IMG/VR virus record: IMGVR_UViG_3300023313_000001
Coordinates: 124,001-188,000 of that record
DNA: 64,000 bases
Reading direction: 5' to 3' (one strand)
Part shown: in pieces, positions 1-30,685 of the stretch
Layout: each line of letters opens with the position of its first letter
Position numbering within the stretch: position 1 is the stretch's first letter
Notes under the pieces: generated by a model
Told to the model about the DNA's origin: nothing
Databases searched by the model: none
The model's input: only the letters and a program-made list of their open reading frames with translations
Made by a program: the position numbers and the translations under genes

Positions 1-3000
1 GCCCAAAAGAAATAGGTAATGTCAGTATCAATACCATTTGTAGATATACGATTCTGTTGAGCATATCTGTAATCATATTTATATTGCACGTTTATAGTGA
101 GATCATCTTTGACTAACGGATCAAAAGCTAACTCATCTGTGGTAGGGATGTGTGACGGCAATATAATTGTTATAGTGTCAGCTTCCACAAAATCTATTGG
201 AATTATTATAGATCCAACGTTGACCACAGTGTAACTATGGAATAAGCCATTTCGGTAGATAGTGACAGTTTGACCATTTGAAATAGTTGGGGGCATTGTA
301 ATAGTCGTACCAGTAGATGTAGCAATATCTACTGTTAATATTACATCTTCAACTTCAGTCCATGGAGTATCAAACAATCCACTACCTCCTACACTCTGAT
401 CGCGTAATCTGGTGTACAGAGTACGTTTTGGAATGCCAGATATAGTTTTTCCACCTTGTTGTTGAGCTATAGTGTAAGTTTCATATGCAGATGGATGTAC
501 TGGTGATTCCACCCATTCGTACAAATTGATAGTACTCCAATCAGCTAACTTGCCCCAGGTGTTTATTCGGTGATCCACCTCTGGAATAATAGACTGGTCG
601 TAATAGTGGGTGTACCCTAATTTAGATGTATCCCACCAAACTTTCCCAACGTATGGTTGAAGCCATGCAGCGTTTCTGTCTACTTTAAACATGGTGAGGT
701 TATCCGTATAAAATGCTGGGTCATCCCCTTGATGAGTTACTATGGACTCAGCCGTGTGGTAATGATGACCTCGTGCAGGATCCCATACTGGAATATTTTT
801 CACATTGGTGTCAGATTTATAATCTATTAACTTGACTGGATTCAGCTTTGTTTTCGCTGGATTTAAACAATATGCAGTGTACGCTATCGACCCAGATATA
901 GGATTATCACTGAAGTGTATTATAGTTGAATTAACTCGTCTGTAATGAATTCCTTCTCGTAGAGTAGCGTTGCGAATACTAACATTAACAATATCCCCTA
1001 CCTGGGTATTGTTTAGAGTTATAGATAATCCGTCTAGTGACTCTTCGAAGTCGGTAGACGGTGTTCCGTTTACGTTAACTAACACACTATTTGCCCGTGT
1101 GATGATTGGTAGATTAAAGAATACAGTAAATGAACTAGATCCATTTGAAATATACTGAAGGGTATGGTTAGGTTGACTTGCAACAATGGTTGTAGCATCA
1201 CAAATCGTTGGAAGCTTTATATATCCTCCTCCAACTTCAACGTCAGTGAAGCTTATTGTGTCTGTTACTTCTGCATCAAAGAACAAGTTTGGTTCGTTAG
1301 TAAATATTTCACTAAGTTGGCCTGGTTGATTATACCATCTAGTATCGTCGGTCAGTTCAATCCGAATAAAGTTTGGTGGTGTTGGATCATCTGTTCCAAA
1401 ATGTAACATTAACTTGTCAGTCTGGGTGTCTGTGGATTGGAGCTTGATTTCTGGATACACTTGCGGTCTCGAATCACCATACTCAGCTAATTTGTATGCC
1501 CAAAATTCATCTACATTTGCATCAATGAATTGTCTAGAATTTATGAAAGCTTTTACCGCATTGGTAGATCCTTTTTGCTGGATTGCTCCTCTATAGAACA
1601 ATAGCTGGGATTTAGACGTGATTCCCATATTATCAAGGTAGTCCTTATGCTCAAATCCGATCAGTTTGCGTGCAGCAGATATCGCAGCAGAATCTTCATT
1701 TGCTACGTTAGTGTCAAAAAACATTTGAAGCTCATTCACTGCAGCCTCCATATTCTGATACATGTTATCACCTAACAAATAGTGGCCTCCTATGTTTGGT
1801 CGAAATGTTTGAGCAGACTGGCGTCTGAAATTGACACTAAGTCTATTAATGGATGATCCTAAAAATTCGTCAAATAATAGATTCCCTTCCACCGTGCGGG
1901 TGGATAACAGTATCGCATGCTCATACCCGTCTACGAATACATGCATGCCACCAATGTGGAGATTGTCTCTAGTAGATGTGGAAACAATAACATCGTTTGG
2001 TATTGTGGAATCCATTATAACTCTGCTAGAGGTATCCCCACGAAACACCTTAACGTGGTGTGGACTTACTGGTCTACCATATTGATCGTAGATTCCTTGT
2101 TGGTTACGGATATCAATGAACGGCCCCGTATGTAAGTCTGCTATAACTCCTATAGTGTGGTCATAATTAACCAAATTACGAAACGGGTTAACTTCGTGGA
2201 ATGTGGCTGGAGTTGGTACGTCAACTCTATACCCACCAATACTGTGGGTGCCTTGCCCTGAAGTTAGTATTTGTATTGGTGTTCCACCCACAGTAGATGC
2301 CAGTTGCAACGTAGATCCAACTACATTAACAACATAGTATACCCCATCTGCAGTAAATGGAGCTGGGAGTGTTCCAGTTGTAGATAGTTGAACTTCTGAT
2401 CCTAAGCTTAATGCCAATGGTTTTGTTCCAGTGATCATAAAGTTATCATTAATAGTATCGGCAAAAACATAATTCCATAATCCTAGAAATTCTACAGGAA
2501 GTTGATCAGACGCCATGCCTACATATAGTTGATCGATAAGTCTTTCAGTCTCCAACTGCCAGTTAATTGTACGACCATATTCTGTATCGATTTCACTGTA
2601 TTGAATTGTGTTGAAGTTAAACCCATGATCCTCTAAATATGATGTGTACCCATCTATAAGATTAATTACTCCTTGGATTCCGGCATAATCAGATCCTAAC
2701 GATGACACTATACTATTTGGAATAAATTCCAACACGTTAGTTTTATCTATTTCATAATGGTTCCATATATCATTGGTGTTTGATCCATTTAACGCTTTGA
2801 ACGATCCTTTAATTGTGGATGAATTTACTGAATATAATTTGATGGATTCCGTAGATGGATTGGGTGTTGTTATGCGAAAATCCCAATCGTTACCTTGGTT
2901 CACTGGAATTCTAACACCATTGTGTCGAAGGTTTGTTCCTACAGCACTAATTACCACGTTAAGTGCGTCAATGTAGCTGTCTTGTAGTCCAGGGGTACGT

Positions 3001-6000
3001 TTAGTTAGTACTGTGATATCCGACTCGTCTAATATGGACGAGTCTGTGGATATACTAATTACATTAGTATCAATGAATGCCCCAGATTGATATGCTAGTC
3101 TAGGTGTCCAGCTTTTCCACAATGTCTTAAAATCAGATGTGTTGGAGTCTAATGAGTTGAATCGTAAGTGTTCAATGTACCATTGATTAATACCATTAAC
3201 TTGTACTGGCTGACCATTTACTATGTCTCCGTGGAAAATAGTATCTCGGTGAGATGGTATTTTATTGGTGTCTGTATCAACAATCAGACCATCAATAGTT
3301 AATAAATTATTTCCCATTGCATAAAAAACAAAACGCATTGGTTGAGTTATGTATGCAATCTCAGCTAAATTATATCGATACAATATCGATCTACGCCAAG
3401 CATCTTCGGTTGGTCCATTGTCTCCAAACAAATATGGATCGTCTGCTGTGCTAGCTAGTGGAGCGTTGATCAACATAATTCCAGATTGTGCTGCAATAGC
3501 ATCATCTGCAACGATGGACGAGTTGTAATATGGAGGAAATAGATCGTCTGGACCGTATCCACCTTCGACTGTGGTATTATCAGTTACATTTACAGATAAT
3601 GCATTATATGTAGTTGCTTCTCCAGCAACTCCAGTGCTAATTAATCCATTAGGTAATTGTTTTCCTACGGGAACAATACCACTGGCGATAGTATTCCACA
3701 TCAACAATGACCAACGTCGGGTGGTTCCAGCGTATGTCAGACTCCACCAGGATGGTTCCACAGTATACCCCTGCAATACCCATGGTTCGAGATGTGGAAT
3801 TCTTGTGTTGTAAACGCCTTCGTATATGTCATACCATCGTGATGGAGGATTACTAATCCATTCTGTAGGAGTGTTTCCTGCGGCAATGTCATAGTCTACA
3901 ATATCCACTGATTTATAATTCCACGTGAAGGCATTGGTTGGGTCATAGTCTGATGCTAATGGGTTTACTATATGATATCGTTTTGCAAATTTTACAAATT
4001 GTTTAGTTTCATTTATAGCGAATTCACTATCAGAAGTTACCTGAGCGATATCATAGTTTAGTCCGGAAGGTACATTAGAATACAATCTGTTTTCCACTTC
4101 CAATAGTACATTTGCGTGGATTGTAGATAAGTCAATTAACATCCAAGCAGCTTCCTGGTCGACTGATACAACATATGTTCCAGCTATTTGTTCAAATAGC
4201 TGGTTTGTTGTTGTATTGTACCAAAAAACCCCGTCTGATGGATTAGTTGGAGCAGAACTACCTACACTAATCACATTGTATTTAAATAGCTCATTAGTAT
4301 CTGAAGAATAGTACATCCATCCTTTGGTAGCAGTTAACGGACGGGATGCTCTTGTGCCAGATGATGTGTTGGGTTGTTTGAGTATGGCTCCAATCATCTG
4401 ACGTTCAATAGTGTTTTCAAATTGTGGATTGGAAACATGTCCATCGTGGTGCCGAAGCTCAATTAACCCAATGCTTGAATCCACAACTAGTTTCGGTTCG
4501 ACTGCGTTTGTCAATTTAACATATGGTAACGTAGGAACCCAGTTACGTATACCCTTCCCAGTTAGTTCGTTATATGTTGTGCTGTCTCCAAATACATTGT
4601 CTCTAGCTCCATTAATCTCAAATCTACTAATAATGTGGTCGTTGATTGTGGATTGTAAATTCACTACAGAGCTGTCTGAAGTACTAGTGACTAATGTGAC
4701 CACATCCTCTTCAAAATAATCTCGCAGTATGTTCAATTGGTTGTCATACCTAATCATAGCAAATTCTAGTAACGTAGCTATAGTGACATTATCTACAAAC
4801 GTTGATGATATTAATGTATCAAATCCGTCATTATATTCCTTGATAAATCCACCCAACCCGTAATTCGGATTTAGTAATAATCGCCACCTGGTCTGTTCAT
4901 CATCGTTGAACCCTGGAGGACTAACTTGAGCTGATATTACCGATTTGAAGTGCTGATATAAGTCAACGCTGGTTAGTACACGGCGATTATCATGTTCGAG
5001 ATTATGGAACATTTGATCAGGAACTTCCCAGTCACCTGTGGGGTCACCCTGGGGAACCGTGTTACGATTTTTGTCTACATATTGTGGAACGTACTCTTCA
5101 TTATTGTTGCCATGGCGCCATATAGTATGCAATGTTGGAGTAGCATCTGTAGATTCGTCAAATTCACTATACGCAAACATCCCGTTAGTTGAAGAGTCTA
5201 ATAGTAGCTGCTCATAACTGAATACTGTACCAGACGATACTATTCGTTTATTAACTACAGAGTTCACTGGATAGGATGATGATTCCAAGAACTTCCACAA
5301 CGGAGTTGCTAGGTAACTTGTAGTTCCATCTAGGTTGTACATATTGAACAGTGGATATTGATTTGTAGTAGTTTTTTGTTGCTCCACTAATCTATAATTC
5401 ACTAAAGACTGGTATGTTGGAACGTATCCATCCACCGTCGAAGTTCGCAATTGGACTGATGCACGTCGTGCATCGGATTGTGCTGCTGGTCCCACTTCCA
5501 CTACAATTGTACCATATCCTATTCCTTCATAGAACACTATTGCATTCCCAGATACAACTTCATGATAAGTACCGTATTGACGCACACCATTTACATATAC
5601 CCTCAGCTCATTTGTGCCAACACTATAGGTTAAAGTTGATAAATTATATGTTAATGTTGTAGGACCTGTAGCTTCAAACGTTTCAGTTTCTGAAAGATAT
5701 AGCGGGTTGCCAGGTACTAGTGTATTATTAAGAGGTTGGTCGTTTACTGGAACGGCAGGATTGTTCCCATTGTATACCCAATGGTGGAAGAATCCTTTCC
5801 AGTCGTCCCCTCGAGAAGTATATCGTATTCCATGAATTCTTGTGTGATTGAATAATGCATCGCTCGGTAATGGAGCATCTAAAGTTGCAGTAATAACATT
5901 TCCGGATTGGGATATATTAACGATGGTGTAATATTGGAATGTTAACGTATTAACAAACTCAATGCTAATAGCTGCACCTATAACGAGATCCACAGACGCT

Positions 6001-7355
6001 GAAGGATATACACTAACGTCCACATCGAATGTATTATTCACCAAATCCAGTGCAGTGGTTGGGAACGTTTGATCCTCCGCTGCGAAAATCTCTTGGTCTG
6101 TGGGAGCATAGTCTACCACATTAAAAATATTGTCGTTCCCTTGATATATCCAATTATGTTGAGTATATGACCATTCGTTTAATTCAATAAATGGGCGGTA
6201 TTCCAGAATGGGTTGTTCTGCTTGTTTGATTAAACTTAGATTAACACCAGAAGGTATATCTGATATATGAGTCCAATGGTTCGATTTGGACCAAGGATCC
6301 TTCTGTAGTTGGAAGTTATACGGGTTTGGTATAGTTACTGAAGCAGTACCATCGTTCATATCCCAATTGCCGGTTACTTGAGGATCAATCCCAGTTAAGT
6401 CATATAAACTCACTGCAATTAACCCATCAGGGGAGTTGGGGTTAAGTCCACCCCCCATGACAAATACCTCTGTTTGATTTAAGACAGCATCGTACGTGGC
6501 TATTGCTACTTGATACAATCCGTTGTTATTTGTAGATTGAACTGCCTGAAAGGTGAATAGTGGAGTGATGTTGAACAACGCTACATAATTACCACTCAGT
6601 ATAAACGAGGATGACGTCATCGAAGATATTAATATTCCATCTAATGGACTGTCCCAGTCACCTTGAAATGTCGGATCCCACTGAAGTGCATCCCAACCGT
6701 CTGTATTGGTTTGATTTAAGGGATCACTTAACTGAATGTACTCTTTTTCCTCCACAATCAACACCAGTCCAGGATAGATTAACTCAATTTGTTGAGCTAA
6801 AGCGTCTTTGGACAGTCCAACTGGTTCTGCCATATATTGTAATACAAGGTCAGATAATCCTACGTTGTCGACGTATGCCTGATCGATTACCGTGCACAAT
6901 TGGTGCAACCGGTTACATATTGTGATATATTGTGGGGTGGTTTCACTCAACCAGTAATAATCTCGGTAGTTTACTGATTTATCAATATCTATAGGTGGAA
7001 TGAAATTAAATTCCAGAGCGTTGGCCCATTCGTTTACACGATCTCCGTTGACACCAAGTCTAACAGACTCTCTGATGATATCTTTAAATGATGATAGGTG
7101 ATCTACTGTTGCAATTTTATTATAAATTAACGGTTGCAGTTGGAACGCCTGACGGTGAGGATCGATTTCAGGTATTTGAGTTCCAGACCCCCCACTACCC
7201 ACAACCCCTACAATGTTGTCAATTTCGGGTTTAGTGAGGTATTTGTTAAACACATTATCAGCAAGTGCACGATTCACATCTGTTTGATAAACAGATGGTA
7301 ACATATCGAATATGTCTGTGAAAGGTTTAGAAAAGTCTGAATCTCTATTTGCCAT
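1..7355 (-). CDS. Giant baseplate wedge/structural protein (gp7-like position), >2450 aa, 3' end beyond the left edge
   Basis: ATG at 7355 (MANRDSDFSKPFTDIFDMLPSVYQT...FNFIPPIDIDKSVNYRDYYW). The same frame still reads as protein at the edge (...DTDITYFFW). It is absent from the ORF track, consistent with no in-frame stop in the window. Late promoter CATAAATA upstream; directly follows gp6. Confidence 0.8.
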   Translation of the reverse strand, partial: MANRDSDFSKPFTDIFDMLPSVYQTDVNRALADNVFNKYLTKPEIDNIVGVVGSGGSGTQIPEIDPHRQAFQLQPLIYNKIATVDHLSSFKDIIRESVRLGVNGDRVNEWANALEFNFIPPIDIDKSVNYRDYYWLSETTPQYITICNRLHQLCTVIDQAYVDNVGLSDLVLQYMAEPVGLSKDALAQQIELIYPGLVLIVEEKEYIQLSDPLNQTNTDGWDALQWDPTFQGDWDSPLDGILISSMTSSSFILSGNYVALFNITPLFTFQAVQSTNNNGLYQVAIATYDAVLNQTEVFVMGGGLNPNSPDGLIAVSLYDLTGIDPQVTGNWDMNDGTASVTIPNPYNFQLQKDPWSKSNHWTHISDIPSGVNLSLIKQAEQPILEYRPFIELNEWSYTQHNWIYQGNDNIFNVVDYAPTDQEIFAAEDQTFPTTALDLVNNTFDVDVSVYPSASVDLVIGAAISIEFVNTLTFQYYTIVNISQSGNVITATLDAPLPSDALFNHTRIHGIRYTSRGDDWKGFFHHWVYNGNNPAVPVNDQPLNNTLVPGNPLYLSETETFEATGPTTLTYNLSTLTYSVGTNELRVYVNGVRQYGTYHEVVSGNAIVFYEGIGYGTIVVEVGPAAQSDARRASVQLRTSTVDGYVPTYQSLVNYRLVEQQKTTTNQYPLFNMYNLDGTTSYLATPLWKFLESSSYPVNSVVNKRIVSSGTVFSYEQLLLDSSTNGMFAYSEFDESTDATPTLHTIWRHGNNNEEYVPQYVDKNRNTVPQGDPTGDWEVPDQMFHNLEHDNRRVLTSVDLYQHFKSVISAQVSPPGFNDDEQTRWRLLLNPNYGLGGFIKEYNDGFDTLISSTFVDNVTIATLLEFAMIRYDNQLNILRDYFEEDVVTLVTSTSDSSVVNLQSTINDHIISRFEINGARDNVFGDSTTYNELTGKGIRNWVPTLPYVKLTNAVEPKLVVDSSIGLIELRHHDGHVSNPQFENTIERQMIGAILKQPNTSSGTRASRPLTATKGWMYYSSDTNELFKYNVISVGSSAPTNPSDGVFWYNTTTNQLFEQIAGTYVVSVDQEAAWMLIDLSTIHANVLLEVENRLYSNVPSGLNYDIAQVTSDSEFAINETKQFVKFAKRYHIVNPLASDYDPTNAFTWNYKSVDIVDYDIAAGNTPTEWISNPPSRWYDIYEGVYNTRIPHLEPWVLQGYTVEPSWWSLTYAGTTRRWSLLMWNTIASGIVPVGKQLPNGLISTGVAGEATTYNALSVNVTDNTTVEGGYGPDDLFPPYYNSSIVADDAIAAQSGIMLINAPLASTADDPYLFGDNGPTEDAWRRSILYRYNLAEIAYITQPMRFVFYAMGNNLLTIDGLIVDTDTNKIPSHRDTIFHGDIVNGQPVQVNGINQWYIEHLRFNSLDSNTSDFKTLWKSWTPRLAYQSGAFIDTNVISISTDSSILDESDITVLTKRTPGLQDSYIDALNVVISAVGTNLRHNGVRIPVNQGNDWDFRITTPNPSTESIKLYSVNSSTIKGSFKALNGSNTNDIWNHYEIDKTNVLEFIPNSIVSSLGSDYAGIQGVINLIDGYTSYLEDHGFNFNTIQYSEIDTEYGRTINWQLETERLIDQLYVGMASDQLPVEFLGLWNYVFADTINDNFMITGTKPLALSLGSEVQLSTTGTLPAPFTADGVYYVVNVVGSTLQLASTVGGTPIQILTSGQGTHSIGGYRVDVPTPATFHEVNPFRNLVNYDHTIGVIADLHTGPFIDIRNQQGIYDQYGRPVSPHHVKVFRGDTSSRVIMDSTIPNDVIVSTSTRDNLHIGGMHVFVDGYEHAILLSTRTVEGNLLFDEFLGSSINRLSVNFRRQSAQTFRPNIGGHYLLGDNMYQNMEAAVNELQMFFDTNVANEDSAAISAARKLIGFEHKDYLDNMGITSKSQLLFYRGAIQQKGSTNAVKAFINSRQFIDANVDEFWAYKLAEYGDSRPQVYPEIKLQSTDTQTDKLMLHFGTDDPTPPNFIRIELTDDTRWYNQPGQLSEIFTNEPNLFFDAEVTDTISFTDVEVGGGYIKLPTICDATTIVASQPNHTLQYISNGSSSFTVFFNLPIITRANSVLVNVNGTPSTDFEESLDGLSITLNNTQVGDIVNVSIRNATLREGIHYRRVNSTIIHFSDNPISGSIAYTAYCLNPAKTKLNPVKLIDYKSDTNVKNIPVWDPARGHHYHTAESIVTHQGDDPAFYTDNLTMFKVDRNAAWLQPYVGKVWWDTSKLGYTHYYDQSIIPEVDHRINTWGKLADWSTINLYEWVESPVHPSAYETYTIAQQQGGKTISGIPKRTLYTRLRDQSVGGSGLFDTPWTEVEDVILTVDIATSTGTTITMPPTISNGQTVTIYRNGLFHSYTVVNVGSIIIPIDFVEADTITIILPSHIPTTDELAFDPLVKDDLTINVQYKYDYRYAQQNRISTNGIDTDITYFFW

Positions 7356-7382
7356 GAAGTTAGTCCCTATACGTATAAAGTA

Positions 7383-7390
7383 TATTTATG
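7383..7390 (-). promoter_or_regulatory. gp55-type late promoter (CATAAATA)
   Basis: Near match to the T4 late consensus TATAAATA, ~28 nt upstream of ATG 7355. Confidence 0.7.
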
Positions 7391-7425
7391 AGAGGGAAAC
7401 TCTAAGAAATTACTGCAGAATTGCT

Positions 7426-7453
7426 AAGGTTGAGGGGTGCACCCCTCAACCTT
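7426..7453. repeat. Perfect 28-bp palindrome/hairpin directly after the gp6 stop
   Basis: AAGGTTGAGGGGTGCACCCCTCAACCTT is its own reverse complement; no U-tract follows on the minus strand. Confidence 0.8.
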
Positions 7454-16700: not shown

Positions 16701-17775
16701 TATATTGGAGTTACCAGGAGCCATGAAAACAGGATATTTACTAACAGATATTCATTTCGGAAAGAAATCTAACTCAGCTATTCACAACCAGGATTGTATT
16801 GATTACTTATCCTGGTTTTGTGAGCAATTTAGAAATGATCCTAATGCTGATTATGTGGCATTCTTGGGGGATTGGCACGAAAACAGAACAGCTATAGATG
16901 TATCAACGCTAGACTATTCCTACCGCGGAGCTAAGATGCTGAATGATTTAGGGGTTCCAGTGTTTTTCCTCATAGGCAATCACGATTTAGGTACACGTGA
17001 TTCTAGGTCATTATACTCAACAATCCCATTTCACGAATTTAAAAATTTCACATTGGTACATAAGGAGCCTATGGTGGTAGACACCATAGATGGTGGATGT
17101 TTATTTGTACCATTTCTGATGGAAGATGAATATCCATCATTGCACCAATACACAGATGTTCCTGTGTGGATGGGGCATTTCGAGTTCAAAGGATTTGTAT
17201 TGACTGGGTACAATATCACATTAGATTATGGACCTGATATTAAAATGTTTAATAAACAGAAAGATATTTTGTCTGGTCATTTTCACCGACGACAGCAACA
17301 AAAAAACGTGACATATATTGGAAACACGTTCCCTATGGATTTTGGTGATGCTAATTTATTTGAACGAGGATTGACGGTCTACAACCATACTGATAATACT
17401 ATAAAGTTCGTTAATTGGACAGCTTGTCCCAAATATATTAAATGTACATTAAGTGATTTGTTAGATGGTAACCAACTATTGATGAATAATAGTTATGTGT
17501 TTGTGGATGTGGATATTCCAGTTAGTTATGAAGAACTAACTGCTATCGAAACCGTATACAATACGAAATACCAGTTGCGTGAGTTAAAATTAGACGAGTC
17601 ATCTAAATTTGTGGAAAGTTTGTTAGGTGATTCTGCTGAAGATGAAGACGATGATACTGAAGGTAAATCTACTGATGAATTAATTGTAGATATGTTAGGA
17701 CAGGTTGATGATACTAAGTTCGATTCGAATCTATTGATAACCATGTACAACAATGCGAGGATCAAAAATGAGTGA
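16681..17775 (+). CDS. gp47: Recombination endonuclease subunit (Mre11/SbcD-like)
   Basis: Metallophosphoesterase motifs TDIHFG, LGDWHENR, IGNHD, GHFE, SGHFH. Confidence 0.92.
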   Translation: MMEPQFNILELPGAMKTGYLLTDIHFGKKSNSAIHNQDCIDYLSWFCEQFRNDPNADYVAFLGDWHENRTAIDVSTLDYSYRGAKMLNDLGVPVFFLIGNHDLGTRDSRSLYSTIPFHEFKNFTLVHKEPMVVDTIDGGCLFVPFLMEDEYPSLHQYTDVPVWMGHFEFKGFVLTGYNITLDYGPDIKMFNKQKDILSGHFHRRQQQKNVTYIGNTFPMDFGDANLFERGLTVYNHTDNTIKFVNWTACPKYIKCTLSDLLDGNQLLMNNSYVFVDVDIPVSYEELTAIETVYNTKYQLRELKLDESSKFVESLLGDSAEDEDDDTEGKSTDELIVDMLGQVDDTKFDSNLLITMYNNARIKNE

Positions 17776-19708
17776 TGATTTAAAAATCCATAGTTTGTGG
17801 ATGCAGAATTTTATGTCATATGGCAATAAAGTAACGCATGTTCCATTAGATACTAAGGGAATGACCTTAATACGTGGAGTGAATTTAGACGATACAGTTA
17901 ATGGAATTGGTGCAAATGGTACCGGCAAATCGACCATTATTAACGCATTAGTGTATGCATTCTATGGAGAGGCTTTGGGTGATAGTAAGGTTGATGAGTT
18001 GATTAATGATGTCAATAAAAAGAGATGTATAGTTGGAGTTCGGTTTTCAATTGGTAAAACTGAATATTCCATAACCAGATATCGTAAAATGAAATCTGGT
18101 GCAGAGGGGACTTACACTAATATATTCATGAACGAAGATGTGGGGAAGGATGATAATGATAAATCTCGTAAAAATTTAGCTAAAGCTACCTTACTCGAAA
18201 CTAACAAGTTGACTAGAGATTTAGTTGGAATGCCCAAAGAGTTGTTCATTAGATTGGTAGTGTTCGATGCGGATGAGTTGCCTTTCTTGAAAATGAAAGC
18301 AGGTGACCAACGAGAGGTGATGGAACATCTATTCCAATTAACTATACTCTCAGAGAAAGCGGACGTCTTTCGTGAAGATCAACGTGGGACAAAGAAAGAG
18401 ATAGATATTCAAGAAAGTACTATATCAGTTTTAGAGAAACAAGTAGAGAATTATGAAATTCAAATATTAACAGCAAAGAAACGTATGGTTCAGTGGGAAC
18501 AAACTAGGGAGTCTACCTTAAACAATTATGACCTGGATTTGAAGGATTTAGATGATGTAGATATTGACCACGAACGTAAATTATTTGACGCTGTAGAACA
18601 AGCTGAAAAAGCTATTGTGGAGTTAAACACTAAAATCGCTGCTATCAAATTGAAAGCATCTGATTCCAAACATGCAATAGATCAAGCTGATAATGATGTA
18701 ACATTATTAAAATCTAAACACAACACTAAAGAATCGAAAATCAGTAGACTTAAAAGAAATATCACTAGATTGCAAGCAGAAATTGACACCCTAGCAAGTA
18801 ACAAATGTCCTGAGTGTTTACAGCCACTCCCAGATGTTGATGTTAAAATTGCTGAACGACAGTCACTTTTGGTTGATGATCAATCGATGATAGATGCCCT
18901 TATCGTAAAAAATGAAGACATTAATGAAAATATTACACAGTGTATATCCCATAGAGACCAAGCACAAACAACATATGATAATATCATTGCTGGTGTGAGT
19001 AGTTTACTCGATGAAATTAAAACGATAGAATGTGATAAGGTGACTCCTTCTGTTAGATCCAGAGATATATTAAATAAGATTGAATCTAAGAAAGATGCAG
19101 CTAAACTTAAAATATCTGAATTACAAAATGCTGAAAACCCTCACATTGAGGCATTCAATGAATTGAATGAGAAGGATATCGATGTGGTAGATTATGATGA
19201 AATTAACCATCTTAAAAAATTATTAGATCATCAAAAATTTTTATTAAAGTTACTAACTGATAAAAAATCATATATTAGACAGAGATTGGTGAATAAGAGG
19301 CTCCCATATCTTAACGAGAGATTGACAACCTACCTTAACCAACTTGGACTACCATACCAGGTAGAATTCCAAAGCGATTTAACAGCTAAAATCCTACGAA
19401 GGGGTCGAACTAAGAGTTTCAGTAACTTATCCCACGGACAACGAGCAAGAGTAAATTTTGCACTGTCTTTTGCATTCAGAGATGTTATGGAACGTGTACA
19501 TAGGAAGATTAACATATGTATTTTAGATGAGGTGTTAGATAAGGCCTTGTGTGCAGTTGGGGCTAATGCTGCAGTTAATATGATTAGTGAAAAGTGTAAG
19601 AGAGATAACCTCAATATTTTTACAATCACTCATAAAACAGAAATAGCTAATCGATTTGACCAAGTAATGACAGTCACCATGAAGCAAGGATTTTCAGAAA
19701 TATCATGA
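17768..19708 (+). CDS. gp46: Recombination ATPase subunit (Rad50/SbcC-like)
   Basis: QNFMSYGN, Walker A GANGTGKST, coiled coil with CPEC zinc hook, signature LSHGQ, Walker B ILDEVLD; start set to MSDDLK. Confidence 0.92.
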   Translation: MSDDLKIHSLWMQNFMSYGNKVTHVPLDTKGMTLIRGVNLDDTVNGIGANGTGKSTIINALVYAFYGEALGDSKVDELINDVNKKRCIVGVRFSIGKTEYSITRYRKMKSGAEGTYTNIFMNEDVGKDDNDKSRKNLAKATLLETNKLTRDLVGMPKELFIRLVVFDADELPFLKMKAGDQREVMEHLFQLTILSEKADVFREDQRGTKKEIDIQESTISVLEKQVENYEIQILTAKKRMVQWEQTRESTLNNYDLDLKDLDDVDIDHERKLFDAVEQAEKAIVELNTKIAAIKLKASDSKHAIDQADNDVTLLKSKHNTKESKISRLKRNITRLQAEIDTLASNKCPECLQPLPDVDVKIAERQSLLVDDQSMIDALIVKNEDINENITQCISHRDQAQTTYDNIIAGVSSLLDEIKTIECDKVTPSVRSRDILNKIESKKDAAKLKISELQNAENPHIEAFNELNEKDIDVVDYDEINHLKKLLDHQKFLLKLLTDKKSYIRQRLVNKRLPYLNERLTTYLNQLGLPYQVEFQSDLTAKILRRGRTKSFSNLSHGQRARVNFALSFAFRDVMERVHRKINICILDEVLDKALCAVGANAAVNMISEKCKRDNLNIFTITHKTEIANRFDQVMTVTMKQGFSEIS

Positions 19709-21607: not shown

Positions 21608-22123
21608 ATGGCATCTAAAAGTAAGACAAAAGGTAGTGCATTTGAAAATGTTATTGCCAAAATGCTTAACACTGTATATAACACAAAAGAATTTTCCAGG
21701 TGTCCACTAAGTGGAGCATGGATGGGACGATCTAATGCGGCTAAACGATCTGGAGTTAACGCAGCTGCACAAGAGACTCTCAGAGGAGACTTAATCACCC
21801 CAGATAGTTTTCCATTTGTCATTGAATGTAAGTCATACCACGATTCTCCTTCCTATAACGGAATCATTCAGGGTGCAGACCGTATGCTGGATAAGTGGTT
21901 AAAAGAAGTTGAGTTCGATGCAACTCAAGCTAATAAAATGCCGATGTTATGGTTTAAAACTACCCGAAAAGGGACATTTGTGGCATTTCCGAAATTATCG
22001 ATAACAGGTGACTTTTCCGAAGTGTTTGACTATGTTCTGTTGTACAGAAACTACATCATCATTAGTCAACAATCGTTTTGTAACGAATTCTCGAATATTT
22101 CTGAAGGAAAATACACAATTTAA
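21608..22123 (+). CDS. Holliday junction resolvase, PD-(D/E)XK Hjc-like
   Basis: SKTKGSAFENVIAK...FSRCPLSGA...GDLITP...FVIECKSY. Confidence 0.8.
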   Translation: MASKSKTKGSAFENVIAKMLNTVYNTKEFSRCPLSGAWMGRSNAAKRSGVNAAAQETLRGDLITPDSFPFVIECKSYHDSPSYNGIIQGADRMLDKWLKEVEFDATQANKMPMLWFKTTRKGTFVAFPKLSITGDFSEVFDYVLLYRNYIIISQQSFCNEFSNISEGKYTI

Positions 22124-22134
22124 TATATAGTTAG

Positions 22135-22162
22135 TTGACATTACCAAATTACTAGGTGTAAT
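22135..22162 (+). promoter_or_regulatory. Sigma70-type promoter reading into the non-coding element
   Basis: Perfect -35 TTGACA (22135-22140); imperfect -10 TGTAAT (22157-22162). Confidence 0.5.
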
Positions 22163-22165
22163 GTG

Positions 22166-22738
22166 TCGACTCAGAGGGCAGCTGTGGTGCTGAAATCATC
22201 ATGAATGGCAAAGGCTAGACGAAAATCATCTCATATTGAGAGAGCTCTCCCTTCTTCAACGAAGGTGCCATAATTAATTTAATAGATTAATTATAATTAC
22301 AAAAAAGGATAAGTAGATCTACTAGACACCTGATCTATGCCGATCGTTGGGCAAAGCATATTATAATCAACAGGTATGAGAATACTGAAGGTTGCTGTCC
22401 TCATCGAGGTGTGTTTAACAATACACTAACCAAAACGAGTGTCTATAACTATGTACATCAGAAATGAATATCAGAAATGAATAATGGTCAATGTAATGTT
22501 GATCCGGTATGCCCACCCCCGCATCCCGATAGGGGGATAATTAATAATTTTAAATTACTTTTTACTTTCGAAATTGCTTACTAAGTAATTAATAAAAAGT
22601 GAGACAGACCTAGTGCAGTGAGCTTATATAGCGAATGCAGTGAGCTATATAGGTCGCGCACAGGTCTCAAATTGCGGAGTGAAACGCAGCAATTTGTAAT
22701 AGTTGCAATGATAGACATTACGTTGTATACTGAGTTGA
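22166..22738 (+). ncRNA. Putative ~570-nt structured non-coding element (unknown ncRNA and/or replication origin)
   Basis: No credible ORF; terminal stem 22166-22174/22730-22738, long-range stem 22175-22182/22394-22401 and many local hairpins. Confidence 0.55.
22457..22482 (+). repeat. 13-bp tandem direct repeat x2
   Basis: ATCAGAAATGAAT ATCAGAAATGAAT. Confidence 0.85.
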
Positions 22739-22768
22739 AGAACAGATTAAATCTATAAGGTAACTCAA

Positions 22769-23374
22769 ATGAGCATATATGCATTTAGTATTAAAGAAAA
22801 CTCCGAGCAATTTGGATGGAGAATATTCCCATCATATTTTACCCCTGAAGAATGTAAGCAACTGATAACTGACCATTCTAATGAAACGCCCTGGGATGGT
22901 GGAGTAGTTAATCAACCAAATGCAACCACTGATGAAAGCCAGTCTAATGTGCTCAAATCAATTCGTAATGTCACTATCAAGACTGTTACGGTTGAAACAT
23001 GTCCTTGGATATTCGATAAAATGAACTCATTAGTTTGGGGAGTAAATGAAGCCTACCAATTTGAACTGACTGGATTTATGGAAGACATGCAACTGCTCCA
23101 TTACGGAGATGACATAGGTGGTGGGCATTATAAGTGGCATCAAGACTGGGGACCTGCATACCTATCAACTCGCAAGTTAACTATCATTGTACAACTAACA
23201 GATCCCGCTGAGTATGATGGATGTCAAACAGAAGTCAGTTGCAATGGAATAGCTCCTCAAGGAATAGGGGATGTAGTTGTATTCCCATCATTCATGCCAC
23301 ATCGAGTACTTGAATTAACCAAAGGAAATCGAGATGCCCTAGTCGCATGGGTTAATGGGCCTCCATATAAATAG
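22769..23374 (+). CDS. 2OG-Fe(II) oxygenase (prolyl-hydroxylase/PKHD-like)
   Basis: HYKWHQD, RKLTIIVQL, VVVFPSFMPHRV, GNRDALVAW. Confidence 0.88.
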   Translation: MSIYAFSIKENSEQFGWRIFPSYFTPEECKQLITDHSNETPWDGGVVNQPNATTDESQSNVLKSIRNVTIKTVTVETCPWIFDKMNSLVWGVNEAYQFELTGFMEDMQLLHYGDDIGGGHYKWHQDWGPAYLSTRKLTIIVQLTDPAEYDGCQTEVSCNGIAPQGIGDVVVFPSFMPHRVLELTKGNRDALVAWVNGPPYK

Positions 23375-30258: not shown

Positions 30259-30641
30259 TATTGTCTGGTATAATCTACCAAGCATGTCTGGCACTAACAA
30301 TACAAGCACCACAGCAAAACAAAAAGTTTGGATGACCACCACACCATCCAAACTTGACGCTGTCTGAATTGGCTCATTAGATGAAATTGCTAAGAAAATA
30401 TACAGAACAAGATTATCCAACTATAGGATAACTGATCCCCAAGTAACATCCTCAATTATACCTAGACCTATTGAGTCTAATATGATACTATCCATTTAGG
30501 CACCCAGTATGTGGGCAGCTATATATGTTAAAACTATAAAAACATGAATATTCTATTAGGGGTATACTTCACCTAACTAATTGATTCTACACGATTAGTT
30601 GTGGGTATAATATACATATCTCACCATTAAAATCAATGAGT

Positions 30642-30649
30642 TATAAATA
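30642..30649 (+). promoter_or_regulatory. Late promoter TATAAATA (scaffold-capsid operon)
   Basis: Exact consensus upstream of RBS AGGAG and ATG 30686. Confidence 0.75.
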
Positions 30650-30685
30650 TTCGGACATACTAGTTATAATCCACAGGAGAACACG

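What the first reader, a model, noticed from the sequence alone, without database searches (positions are those of the whole stretch)
22135..22738. Promoter-led, ORF-free ~570-nt element closed by a terminal stem: candidate new large phage ncRNA
Seen: the longest non-coding gap in a tightly packed region, starting right after a TTGACA promoter. Its first bases TCGACTCAG (22166-74) pair with CTGAGTTGA (22730-38) and enclose the whole element. AGGGCAGC (22175-82) pairs with GCTGTCCT (22394-401). Nested stems include ATGGCA/TGCCAT (22205-10/22266-71), CCTTC/GAAGG, an AT-rich hairpin (~22270-94), ACCTG/CAGGT, TATGC/GCATA and ACTTTTTA/TAAAAAGT (22557-64/22593-600). TAGACAC (22323-29)/GTGTCTA (22439-45) would cross the second stem as a pseudoknot. 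Both long-range stems need G.U pairs on the + strand, which favours that strand. I see no tmRNA, RNase P, SRP or intron core motifs. Inference: an undescribed multi-domain RNA, possibly a replication primer (next finding).
Basis: partly seen in the sequence, partly recalled or inferred. Interest (0 to 1): 0.82.

Follow-up and report, generated by a model that had tools for sequence, protein, structure and literature searches.

The report
New large structured RNA in phages
The 645-base gene-free gap holds a previously undescribed, roughly 530-nucleotide folded RNA with its own promoter.

Summary
Twelve further distinct metagenomic phage loci keep an ORF-poor gap of about 470-1000 nt near the same PDDEXK nuclease gene. 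These gaps share sequence blocks and covarying helices.

- **Shared core (13 loci):** a hairpin plus H-type pseudoknot (22486-22536), and hairpins capped by a GA/AC-GNA-GU/GA motif (two in tandem in most loci; 22601-22697 in the window).
- **5' domain (9 loci):** a 230-nt multi-helix domain (22174-22402).
- **Covariation:** 5' half 91% paired against 39-46% in slid controls, with 21 of 37 pairs compensatory. There are 77 G.U cells against 10 A.C cells, which places the RNA on the + strand.
- **Promoter:** a sigma70-type promoter, GTTGAC(A/T)-N17/18-(-10), is conserved in 6 lineages just upstream.
- **Not supported:** the terminal closing stem and the pseudoknot TAGACAC/GTGTCTA are specific to the window. 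The long-range stem AGGGCAGC/GCTGTCCT competes with a better supported local helix (22174-79 with 22244-49).
- **No match:** nothing in Rfam 15, GenBank phages, IMG/VR or GTDB genomes.
- **Gaps in evidence:** no transcript data exist, and the replication-primer idea is untested.

Verdict: a new, modular family of large phage ncRNA. Its function is inferred only.

The parts
21608..22123 (+). Upstream gene: PDDEXK_15 (Hjc-like) endonuclease, 171 aa. Used as the synteny anchor.
   Evidence: Pfam PF24608, E 1.6e-26. Homologues at 44-73% identity.
22135..22164 (+). Sigma70-type promoter: -35 TTGACA (22135-40), 18-nt spacer, -10 TAATGT (22159-64). Predicted start is about 22170-72, 2-4 nt before the first helix.
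   Evidence: GTTGAC(A/T)-N17/18-(TAATGT/TATGAT/CATTAT/TATAAT) stands at the same place in the window, L037, L039, L040, L045 and L051. Read directly from the sequences; not confirmed by transcript data.
22174..22249 (+). 5' junction of domain A. Helix P1alt (GAGGGC 22174-79 with GCUCUC 22244-49) encloses P2 (22183-89/22197-203), a mini-hairpin (22207-09/22214-16) and P4 (22229-32/22238-41).
   Evidence: P1alt is 100% paired in 9 sequences, with 5 of 6 columns compensatory. P2 is 98% paired, with 4 of 7 compensatory. P4 has 4 of 4 compensatory.
22250..22306 (+). P5 (CCUUC 22250-54 with GAAGG 22261-65), the AGGUGCC box, P6 AT-rich hairpin (22270-78/22286-94) with conserved loop UUUAAUAGA, then a conserved ACAAAAA stretch (22300-06).
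   Evidence: On the structure-blind alignment P5 is 90% paired with 3 of 6 pairs compensatory, and P6 has 7 of 11 compensatory. On the model-fitted alignment P5 is 89% paired with 5 of 6 compensatory.
22307..22402 (+).
   Evidence: Blocks are invariant in 8 sequences. For the long-range stem, the inner 7 bp are about 96% paired, mostly through wobble-compatible changes plus one compensatory change. It overlaps P1alt by 4 nt and is absent in L052.
22408..22485 (+). Hairpin P9 (22408-27) and a purine-rich variable linker. The linker holds two 13-nt direct repeats (22451-76) that are specific to this genome.
   Evidence: The linker is poorly conserved apart from an A/G-rich GAAUGAAU-like stretch before the next hairpin.
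22486..22536 (+). Core module, present in all 13 distinct loci. Hairpin Pa (22486-22504) abuts stem Pb (CGGUAUGC 22505-12 with GCAUCCCG 22521-28). The C-rich loop of Pb (22513-20) pairs with the G-run 22532-36 after AUA, giving an H-type pseudoknot.
   Evidence: 88.8% of cells paired against 27-58% in slid controls. Pb has 4 compensatory pairs. Pseudoknot pair 45-62 is U.G in 6, C-G in 3 and U-A in 3. Pa is a hairpin of different sequence in at least 10 of 13. The 10-mer CGWTAGRGGG occurs once per locus and nowhere else in 463 kb.
22537..22600 (+). A/U-rich spacer (about 80% AT) with a local hairpin (ACUUUUUA/UAAAAAGU).
   Evidence: An AT-rich spacer follows the G-run in every homologue; the hairpins in it are not alignable.
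22601..22697 (+). Tandem 3' hairpins H1 (22601-68, long) and H2 (22668-97). H1 is capped by the conserved motif GA-AU-GCA-GU-GA (22633-43). The family consensus is GA-AC-GNA-GU-GA: tandem G.A pairs, 2 bp and a GNA triloop.
   Evidence: Capped hairpin is 92% paired against 30-37% slid, with 7 of 9 pairs compensatory. The motif is confined to this element in all loci.
22703..22768 (+). Promoter-like site for the next gene (TTGCAA-N17-TATACT, 22703-31) and its ribosome-binding region.
   Evidence: A -10-like box 25-40 nt before the start codon recurs in the homologues.
22769..23374 (+). Downstream gene: 2OG-Fe(II) oxygenase, 201 aa.
   Evidence: Pfam PF13640, E 1.4e-10. Downstream neighbour in 10 of the 12 loci that reach a downstream gene, but not in L050 or L051.

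Best explanation
The gap encodes a stand-alone, modular structured non-coding RNA of about 530 nt (roughly 22171 to 22697, + strand). It is transcribed early by host sigma70 RNA polymerase from its own promoter.

Shown:
- The region is under selection as an RNA secondary structure.
- A 3' core is shared by all 13 distinct loci. It consists of a hairpin stacked on an H-type pseudoknot with an invariant CG(A/U)UAG + G-run, an AU-rich spacer, and hairpins capped by tandem G.A pairs and a GNA triloop (two in tandem in most loci).
- An accessory 230-nt multi-helix 5' domain is present in 9 of the 13.
- In that 5' domain two mutually exclusive pairings of the same 5' strand are both maintained. One is the local P1alt, which can form first during transcription. 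The other is a long-range helix with an invariant strand 220 nt downstream, which is more stable in the full-length RNA.

Inferred:
- The RNA ends at, or is processed at, the long tandem hairpins just before the next gene's own promoter.
- It acts as an RNA in trans. Its invariant junction and loop nucleotides would bind a protein or ligand partner, and the 5' domain may rearrange during or after synthesis.
- The molecular target is unknown.
For: Synteny-conserved ORF-poor gap of about 470-1000 nt in 12 further distinct loci.

Nucleotide blocks are conserved although the flanking proteins are only 50-73% identical.

Covariation:
- 5' half of domain A, on a structure-blind MAFFT alignment: 37 pairs, 91.3% paired against 39-46% slid, 21 compensatory pairs, 0 of 500 shuffles as high.
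- A covariance model built from 8 sequences finds the divergent L052 copy (35 bits, E 1e-5), which adds further compensatory changes.
- Pseudoknot module.
- Capped hairpin.

Strand: 77 G.U cells against 10 A.C cells, so 90.6% paired on the + strand and 77.7% on the minus strand.

Promoter: -35 and -10 with fixed spacing conserved in 6 lineages, 3-20 nt before the first helix.

The downstream gene differs in L050 and L051 while the core is kept, and a second promoter-like box precedes the next gene.

There is no conserved ORF: short translated matches occur in every frame and on both strands.

The P1 and P1alt conformers lie within 2-10 kcal/mol of each other.
Against: - No transcript evidence. 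The only RNA runs from the source study are tiny and do not hold the region.
- No canonical intrinsic terminator (U-tract) follows H1/H2, so read-through into the next gene, meaning a leader role, is not excluded.
- All loci are related phages found through one anchor gene. The compensatory changes therefore come from a limited number of independent events, and co-occurrence statistics are weak.
- The L041/L047/L057 clade lacks the recognisable promoter at that position and has a terminator-like hairpin directly before domain A.
- The trans-acting function is pure inference.
Confidence: 0.55

Rival explanations
1. Cis-acting leader. The RNA would be the long 5' untranslated region of the early transcript for the downstream gene(s). 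Domain A would act as a sensing aptamer that switches between P1 and P1alt. The pseudoknot and hairpins would act as an expression platform, a processive antitermination signal or a processing signal.
For: - Same orientation as the flanking genes in every locus, with no U-tract terminator before the next ORF.
- Two conserved, mutually exclusive helices are typical of switches.
- Domain A is found only where a 2OG-Fe(II) oxygenase gene follows (9 loci), and is absent from L050, L051 and L059, which lack that gene.
Against: - The conserved core precedes unrelated genes in L050 and L051.
- L044 has the oxygenase gene but no detectable domain A.
- The aptamer-like domain lies about 370 nt from the start codon.
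- No helix sequesters the ribosome-binding site or forms a terminator.
- A separate promoter-like box sits between H2 and the ORF.
- Synteny among relatives makes the co-occurrence non-independent.
Confidence: 0.22
2. Origin-of-replication transcript. An early-promoter RNA would form a persistent RNA-DNA hybrid and prime leading-strand synthesis. RNA folding would decide whether the hybrid forms, as in ColE1 RNA II or the R-loop origins of T4.
For: - Early-type promoter.
- A conserved G-run followed by an AT-rich stretch of about 60-100 nt that could serve as an unwinding element.
- Alternative conserved folds.
- A size similar to ColE1 RNA II (from my own knowledge).
- T4 oriE depends on an early promoter, and T4 origins use transcripts as primers (PMC3016281).
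- The locus is 1-2 kb from baseplate genes, as T4 oriE is (from my own knowledge).
Against: - R-loop formation at T4 oriF needs no specific sequence (PMC3016281), so the extensive covariation is unexplained by this model.
- There is no inflection of GC skew at the element.
- The transcription-strand switch of the window is at about 16.1 kb, not here.
- There are no conserved iterons; the 13-nt repeats are specific to the window.
- Nothing here tests replication.
Confidence: 0.1
3. DNA-level or passive element. This would be a spacer holding the terminator of the upstream gene, protein-binding sites and the promoter of the next gene, or the remnant of a decayed gene or mobile element, with no function as a folded RNA.
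For: - H1 and H2 stems are almost all Watson-Crick, so they could also form in DNA (alignment A6).
- Hairpins stand next to promoters.
- A distant relative (L059) keeps only one capped hairpin in a 275-nt gap.
Against: - 77 G.U against 10 A.C cells.
- Compensatory changes in at least 7 helices.
- An RNA-type pseudoknot, tandem G.A pairs, and GNRA or UUCG-like loops.
- Blocks stay invariant across lineages whose proteins are about 60% identical.
- No conserved reading frame.
- No other copies in the window or in any collection.
Confidence: 0.05

Closest known systems
ROOL, GOLLD and OLE: the large 'ornate' bacterial and phage-borne ncRNAs (PMC5737381; PMC12286853)
   Same: - Size class (about 500-800 nt).
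- Many covarying helices and pseudoknots.
- Highly conserved junction nucleotides.
- Carried by phages or prophages (GOLLD, ROOL).
- Function not deducible from context.
- Found by comparative analysis of long intergenic regions.
   Different: - No sequence or structure match: Rfam 15 gives no hit at E up to 10 in the window or in 5 homologues.
- No tRNA genes nearby: none in 64 kb.
- Very narrow distribution: 13 metagenomic phage loci.
- Modular, with an optional 5' domain.
- Whether it forms multimeric assemblies like those RNAs is unknown.
ColE1 RNA II pre-primer and the T4 origin transcripts oriF, oriG and oriE (PMC3016281)
   Same: - Promoter-led, non-coding transcript of about 0.5 kb.
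- Alternative folds.
- A G-run followed by AT-rich DNA.
- Early-promoter dependence, as reported for T4 oriE.
   Different: - No evidence of origin activity, hybrid formation or RNase H processing.
- T4 R-loop origins need no conserved RNA structure.
- No antisense regulator was identified.
- No skew signal.
Riboswitches and processive-antitermination leaders (for example HK022 put, EAR)
   Same: - Structured RNA starting a few nucleotides after a promoter.
- Conserved, mutually exclusive helices.
- An H-type pseudoknot.
   Different: - Far larger.
- The downstream gene is not constant.
- No terminator or Shine-Dalgarno-sequestering helix.
- No Rfam riboswitch or leader match.
phi29 pRNA and other phage-encoded stable RNAs
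   Same: A phage-encoded, promoter-led structured RNA that works as RNA.
   Different: pRNA is 174 nt, specific to phi29-like podoviruses, and acts at the portal. There is no similarity or packaging context here.

Membership tests
Any Rfam 15 family (including ROOL, GOLLD, OLE, group I/II introns, RNase P, tmRNA, 6S, riboswitches) | Covariance-model score at or above the family gathering threshold | tested here: not met
   No match at gathering threshold in the whole window. With E up to 10, only chance snoRNA-type hits appear in 21900-23000. No hit inside the element in 5 homologous loci. ARAGORN finds no tRNA or tmRNA.
Conserved structured ncRNA (generic criteria) | Homologous region in several genomes, with compensatory base changes above controls | tested here: met
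   13 distinct loci. Searches give 89-99% of cells paired against 27-58% in slid controls, and 0 of 500 shuffles reach the observed covariation score.
Conserved structured ncRNA (generic criteria) | Strand-specific signal (G.U tolerated, A.C not) | tested here: met
   77 G.U against 10 A.C cells in 520.
Conserved structured ncRNA (generic criteria) | Detected as a discrete transcript | not testable with these tools
   No listed RNA run holds the region. Three small metatranscriptomes from the source study gave no laid reads.
Stand-alone RNA gene | Own promoter and own 3' end | tested here: inconclusive
   The promoter consensus is conserved in 6 lineages. The 3' end is inferred from the tandem hairpins H1/H2, which have no U-tract, and the terminator scan finds nothing there.
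Riboswitch or cis-regulatory leader | Constant association with one gene family, and an expression platform overlapping a terminator or the ribosome-binding site | tested here: not met
   The core precedes unrelated genes in L050 and L051. No terminator or Shine-Dalgarno-sequestering helix was found. Domain A alone does track the oxygenase gene, in 9 of the 10 loci that carry that gene downstream.
R-loop or primer-RNA replication origin (T4 oriF/G type, ColE1 type) | Promoter plus downstream AT-rich unwinding element | tested here: inconclusive
   A promoter and an AT-rich stretch (22537-22600) exist, but AT-rich spacers are common in a genome with 36% GC.
R-loop or primer-RNA replication origin (T4 oriF/G type, ColE1 type) | Origin activity, persistent hybrid, compositional-skew shift | tested here: not met
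   No skew inflection at 22.1-22.7 kb. Origin activity and hybrid formation cannot be tested here.
Intrinsic terminator | GC-rich hairpin followed by a U-tract | tested here: not met
   No terminator-like site in 22124-22768 on the + strand. The sequences after H2 are not U-rich in the homologues.
Protein-coding gene, possibly recoded or decayed | An open frame under some genetic code, or a conserved peptide | tested here: not met
   TAA, TAG and TGA occur in all six frames. Translated similarity between homologues is confined to short blocks in every frame and on both strands.

The most novel reading that the evidence does not exclude
The element is a folding-controlled replication pre-primer of a giant T4-like phage. 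In this reading, the choice between the co-transcriptional P1alt fold and the long-range P1 fold decides whether the conserved G-run and AU-rich segment stays hybridised to the template and primes DNA synthesis. It would be a phage counterpart of ColE1 RNA II, and a sequence-defined model for early-promoter origins such as T4 oriE. An equally unexcluded alternative is that, like ROOL and GOLLD, it self-assembles into an RNA-only multimer.
Probability: 0.1. Interest if true: 0.9.

Novelty: new variant of a known kind. Interest (0 to 1): 0.7.

Why it matters
Large, intricately folded non-coding RNAs are rare, and each class found so far (OLE, GOLLD, ROOL, HEARO/omega RNAs) has led to new biology.

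This one is supported by strong covariation. It has a clear modular anatomy and an apparently bistable 5' domain. It sits among early nucleotide-metabolism and recombination genes of uncultured jumbo phages, so it could be a new phage tool for take-over, regulation or replication.

It is about 530 nt long and has a sigma70-type promoter, so it can be synthesised and tested directly by probing, cryo-EM, pull-downs and expression in a laboratory host.

Tried and rejected
- **Rfam, three searches:** no family matched. ARAGORN found nothing.
- **GenBank phages:** megablast and blastn gave no match. tblastn with the 976-aa neighbour gave none. The closest cultured relatives by the SbcC-like protein are only about 31% identical: RsoM2USA and PA5oct.
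- **IMG/VR:** only the window's own contig carries the element. The first DNA pattern hit three unrelated coding regions by chance. The pseudoknot patterns found nothing.
- **GTDB genomes:** two pattern scans found nothing.
- **Metagenome scan:** gave two more loci, L057 (new) and L058 (nearly identical to L047).
- **RNA evidence:** none was listed, and laying four runs showed only DNA contigs of the source sample.
- **Recoded or decayed gene:** rejected.
- **Repeat or mobile element:** rejected, with no other copy in the window or loci.
- **Capped hairpin as a general terminator of these phages:** rejected, because it occurs only in this element.
- **GTTGAC as a genome-wide enriched promoter word:** not enriched.
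- **Domain A in L044, L046, L050, L051, L059:** not found, even with filters off or with nhmmer.
- **ORF-poor 1-7453:** explained by a giant minus-strand ORF.
- **Literature:** searches found no description of this element.

Full report
**Setting.** The window is bases 120001-184000 of a 229.5-kb IMG/VR contig from a microbial-mat metagenome. It is a jumbo T4-like myovirus. It carries gp47/gp46-type SbcCD nuclease, NT5C, a T4 baseplate protein and other such genes. Its closest cultured relatives are only about 31% identical in the SbcC-like protein. The finding lies between a PDDEXK_15 (Hjc-like) nuclease gene (21608-22123) and a 2OG-Fe(II) oxygenase gene (22769-23374), both on the + strand.

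**Checking the observation.**
- The 645-nt gap has TAA, TAG and TGA stops in all six frames.
- It is the longest non-coding stretch of the window. The next gap is 243 nt, and the apparently empty first 7.4 kb is a giant minus-strand ORF that runs off the window.
- The + strand of 22166-22738 folds to -159.9 kcal/mol (z -5.05 against dinucleotide shuffles). The minus strand gives z -3.1.
- Rfam 15 gives nothing at gathering threshold, and only chance snoRNA-type hits at E up to 10.
- There are no tRNA or tmRNA genes, no other copy in the window, and no match among 50,697 GenBank phages.

**Relatives.**
- The nuclease protein has relatives at 44-73% identity on long metagenomic contigs.
- I fetched their contexts and ran one DNA-pattern scan of metagenomes. 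This gave 12 further distinct loci beside the window, 13 in all.
- In 10 of the 13 loci the order nuclease, gap, 2OG oxygenase is kept. In the window's nearer relatives the neighbours further out match as well.
- The gap stays ORF-poor and long, at 574-998 nt.
- L050 and L051 have a different arrangement: one or two small genes after the nuclease, unrelated genes after the gap, and terminase nearby. They still carry part of the element.
- L046 ends before any downstream gene.
- A more distant phage, L059 (44% identity), has only a 275-nt gap with one capped hairpin.
- Translated similarity between the gaps is limited to short blocks in all frames and on both strands, so no peptide is conserved.

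**Anatomy from comparison: promoter.** GTTGAC(A/T), a 17-18-nt spacer and a -10 box (TAATGT, TATGAT, CATTAT or TATAAT) are conserved in the window, L037, L039, L040, L045 and L051. The predicted start lies 3-20 nt before the first helix. In L037 the promoter lies inside the end of the nuclease gene.

**Anatomy from comparison: domain A (22174-22402).**
- It is present in 8 sequences, plus a divergent ninth (L052). A covariance model built without L052 found that copy (35 bits, E 1e-5).
- On a structure-blind MAFFT alignment of the 5' half, six helices (37 pairs) are 91.3% paired against 39-46% when partners are slid by 1-3 columns.
- 21 pairs show changes on both sides (0 of 500 shuffles reach this), and the covariation score is 0.468 against 0.187.
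- With L052 added, the alignment has 27 compensatory pairs.
GAGGGC (22174-79) pairs with GCUCUC (22244-49). I call it P1alt. It is 100% paired in 9 sequences, with 5 of 6 columns compensatory.
- P1alt closes a junction made of P2, a three-pair mini-hairpin and P4.

- AGGGCAGC/GCTGTCCT is conserved in potential. The inner 7 bp are about 96% paired, the changes are wobble-compatible, and there is one compensatory change.
- It shares 4 nt with P1alt, so the two cannot both form fully.
- It has no counterpart in L052.
- Constrained folding makes the long-range form 2-10 kcal/mol more stable in the complete domain. P1alt can nevertheless form after only 77 nt have been transcribed.
- ATGGCA/TGCCAT is 89% paired, with one compensatory change and one mismatch. 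The same UGCC box pairs 100% of the time with a second conserved GGCA box at 22350-57.
- I read this as a domain with two evolutionarily maintained, alternative folds. Which fold is functional is not settled.

**Anatomy from comparison: core (22486-22697), present in all 13 loci.**
- Hairpin Pa has a different sequence in each lineage and abuts stem Pb.
- The C-rich loop of Pb pairs with a G-run that follows the invariant CG(A/U)UAG.
- On a MAFFT alignment of 13 sequences, 88.8% of cells pair against 27-58% in slid controls.
- Pb has 4 compensatory pairs. The pseudoknot pair 45-62 runs C-G, U.G, U-A.
- In L050 the C-run lies after the G-run instead of in the loop. This also argues that the G-run needs a C-rich partner.
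- An AU-rich spacer follows.
- In most loci two adjacent hairpins (H1 long, H2 shorter) come next. They are capped by GA-AC-GNA-GU-GA: tandem G.A pairs, two base pairs and a GNA triloop. The capped hairpin is 92% paired against 30-37% slid, with 7 of 9 pairs compensatory.
- Both the 10-mer of the pseudoknot and the capped hairpin occur once per locus, and nowhere else in 463 kb of related phage DNA.

**Strand.** Over 520 paired cells there are 77 G.U and 10 A.C. The structure therefore works on the + strand (90.6% paired) and not on the minus strand (77.7%).

**What fails.**
- The terminal stem 22166-74/22730-38 is strong in the window (-13.3 kcal/mol, z -3.2). None of 7 homologues can close the element in that way (z -0.9 to +1.7).
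- Its 3' arm lies in the promoter-like site of the next gene (22703-31).
- The proposed pseudoknot TAGACAC/GTGTCTA is not better than shuffles in any sequence.
- The 13-nt direct repeats at 22451-76 are specific to the window.

**Mechanism.** Two things are shown: the region is selected as a folded + strand RNA with a conserved promoter, and its modules are conserved independently. The core occurs without domain A in 4 loci.

I infer a stand-alone early transcript that ends or is processed at H1/H2, which are long stems that could be RNase III-type sites, and that acts through its invariant junctions and loops on an unknown partner. My reasons for preferring this to a leader role are:
- the downstream gene changes while the core stays;
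- a second promoter-like box precedes the next gene;
- no helix masks a ribosome-binding site or forms a terminator.

A leader or switch role remains a serious rival. There is no U-tract terminator, domain A tracks the oxygenase gene, and two exclusive helices are conserved.

T4 oriE depends on an early promoter and T4 origins use transcripts as primers (PMC3016281). ColE1 RNA II is a folded pre-primer of about 550 nt with a G-run (from my own knowledge). However, there is no skew signal here, there are no conserved iterons, and R-loop origins do not require conserved RNA structure.

No transcript data could be obtained.

**Comparison and novelty.** The nearest known kind is the small set of large ornate ncRNAs, some of them phage-borne: ROOL, GOLLD and OLE (PMC5737381, PMC12286853). 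This element shares their size class, complexity and lack of obvious function. It matches none of them, is not next to tRNA genes, and has a much narrower distribution. It is found only in metagenome assemblies, once in IMG/VR, and never in GTDB genomes. Literature searches found no description of it. I rate it a new family within a known kind.

**Limits.**
- There are only 9 domain-A sequences and 13 core sequences.
- All were found through one anchor gene or one pattern.
- They belong to perhaps 7-8 lineages.
- No R-scape-type significance test was run.
- The ends of the RNA are not mapped.

Noticed in passing
L041 about 4330-4560; L047 5560-5800; L057 930-1060 (minus strand); copies also in L042, L043, L048, L049, L058: One clade carries an extra stretch of about 370 nt upstream of domain A. 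It holds 3-5 hairpins whose stems differ but whose loops share GGUGUGACAGC. GACAGC is complementary to the invariant GCUGUC strand at the 3' end of domain A. A GC hairpin with a GNRA or UUCG-like loop and a U-rich tail follows, directly before domain A. The motif is absent from the window.
   Followed up: partly
L044 1452-4517; L037 and L038 1-2957: The SbcC-like (gp46-type) gene is about 1011-1021 aa and carries a LAGLIDADG_3 hit in these relatives, against 651 aa in the window (17753-19708). This suggests an intein or a homing-endonuclease insertion in some lineages.
   Followed up: no
window 1-7453, minus strand: One frame of the minus strand has only 3 stops over 7.4 kb, all in the 600 nt next to 7453. 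A giant ORF of more than about 2,200 codons therefore runs off the left end of the window. It is not listed by the ORF tool, so the region looks falsely empty.
   Followed up: partly
L059 2844-3118: A more distant relative (nuclease 44% identical) lacks the RNA. It keeps one hairpin capped by ACGAAGU (3033-3052) and has the word AAGTACTTGA three times in the gap. A helicase gene replaces the oxygenase gene.
   Followed up: partly
L045 5654-6061, minus strand; L044 5507-5686: The gene calls of the source assemblies place a 135-aa reverse ORF over the element in L045, and a 59-aa ORF at the start of the gap in L044. Neither ORF is conserved in the other loci, so both are probably spurious calls.
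   Followed up: partly
window 22451-22476: Two tandem 13-nt repeats (ATGTACATCAGAA / ATGAATATCAGAA) lie in the linker between domain A and the pseudoknot. They are not conserved in any homologue.
   Followed up: yes
window 30421-30663: This is the second-longest stretch without an ORF of 45 aa or more (243 nt). I did not examine it.
   Followed up: no
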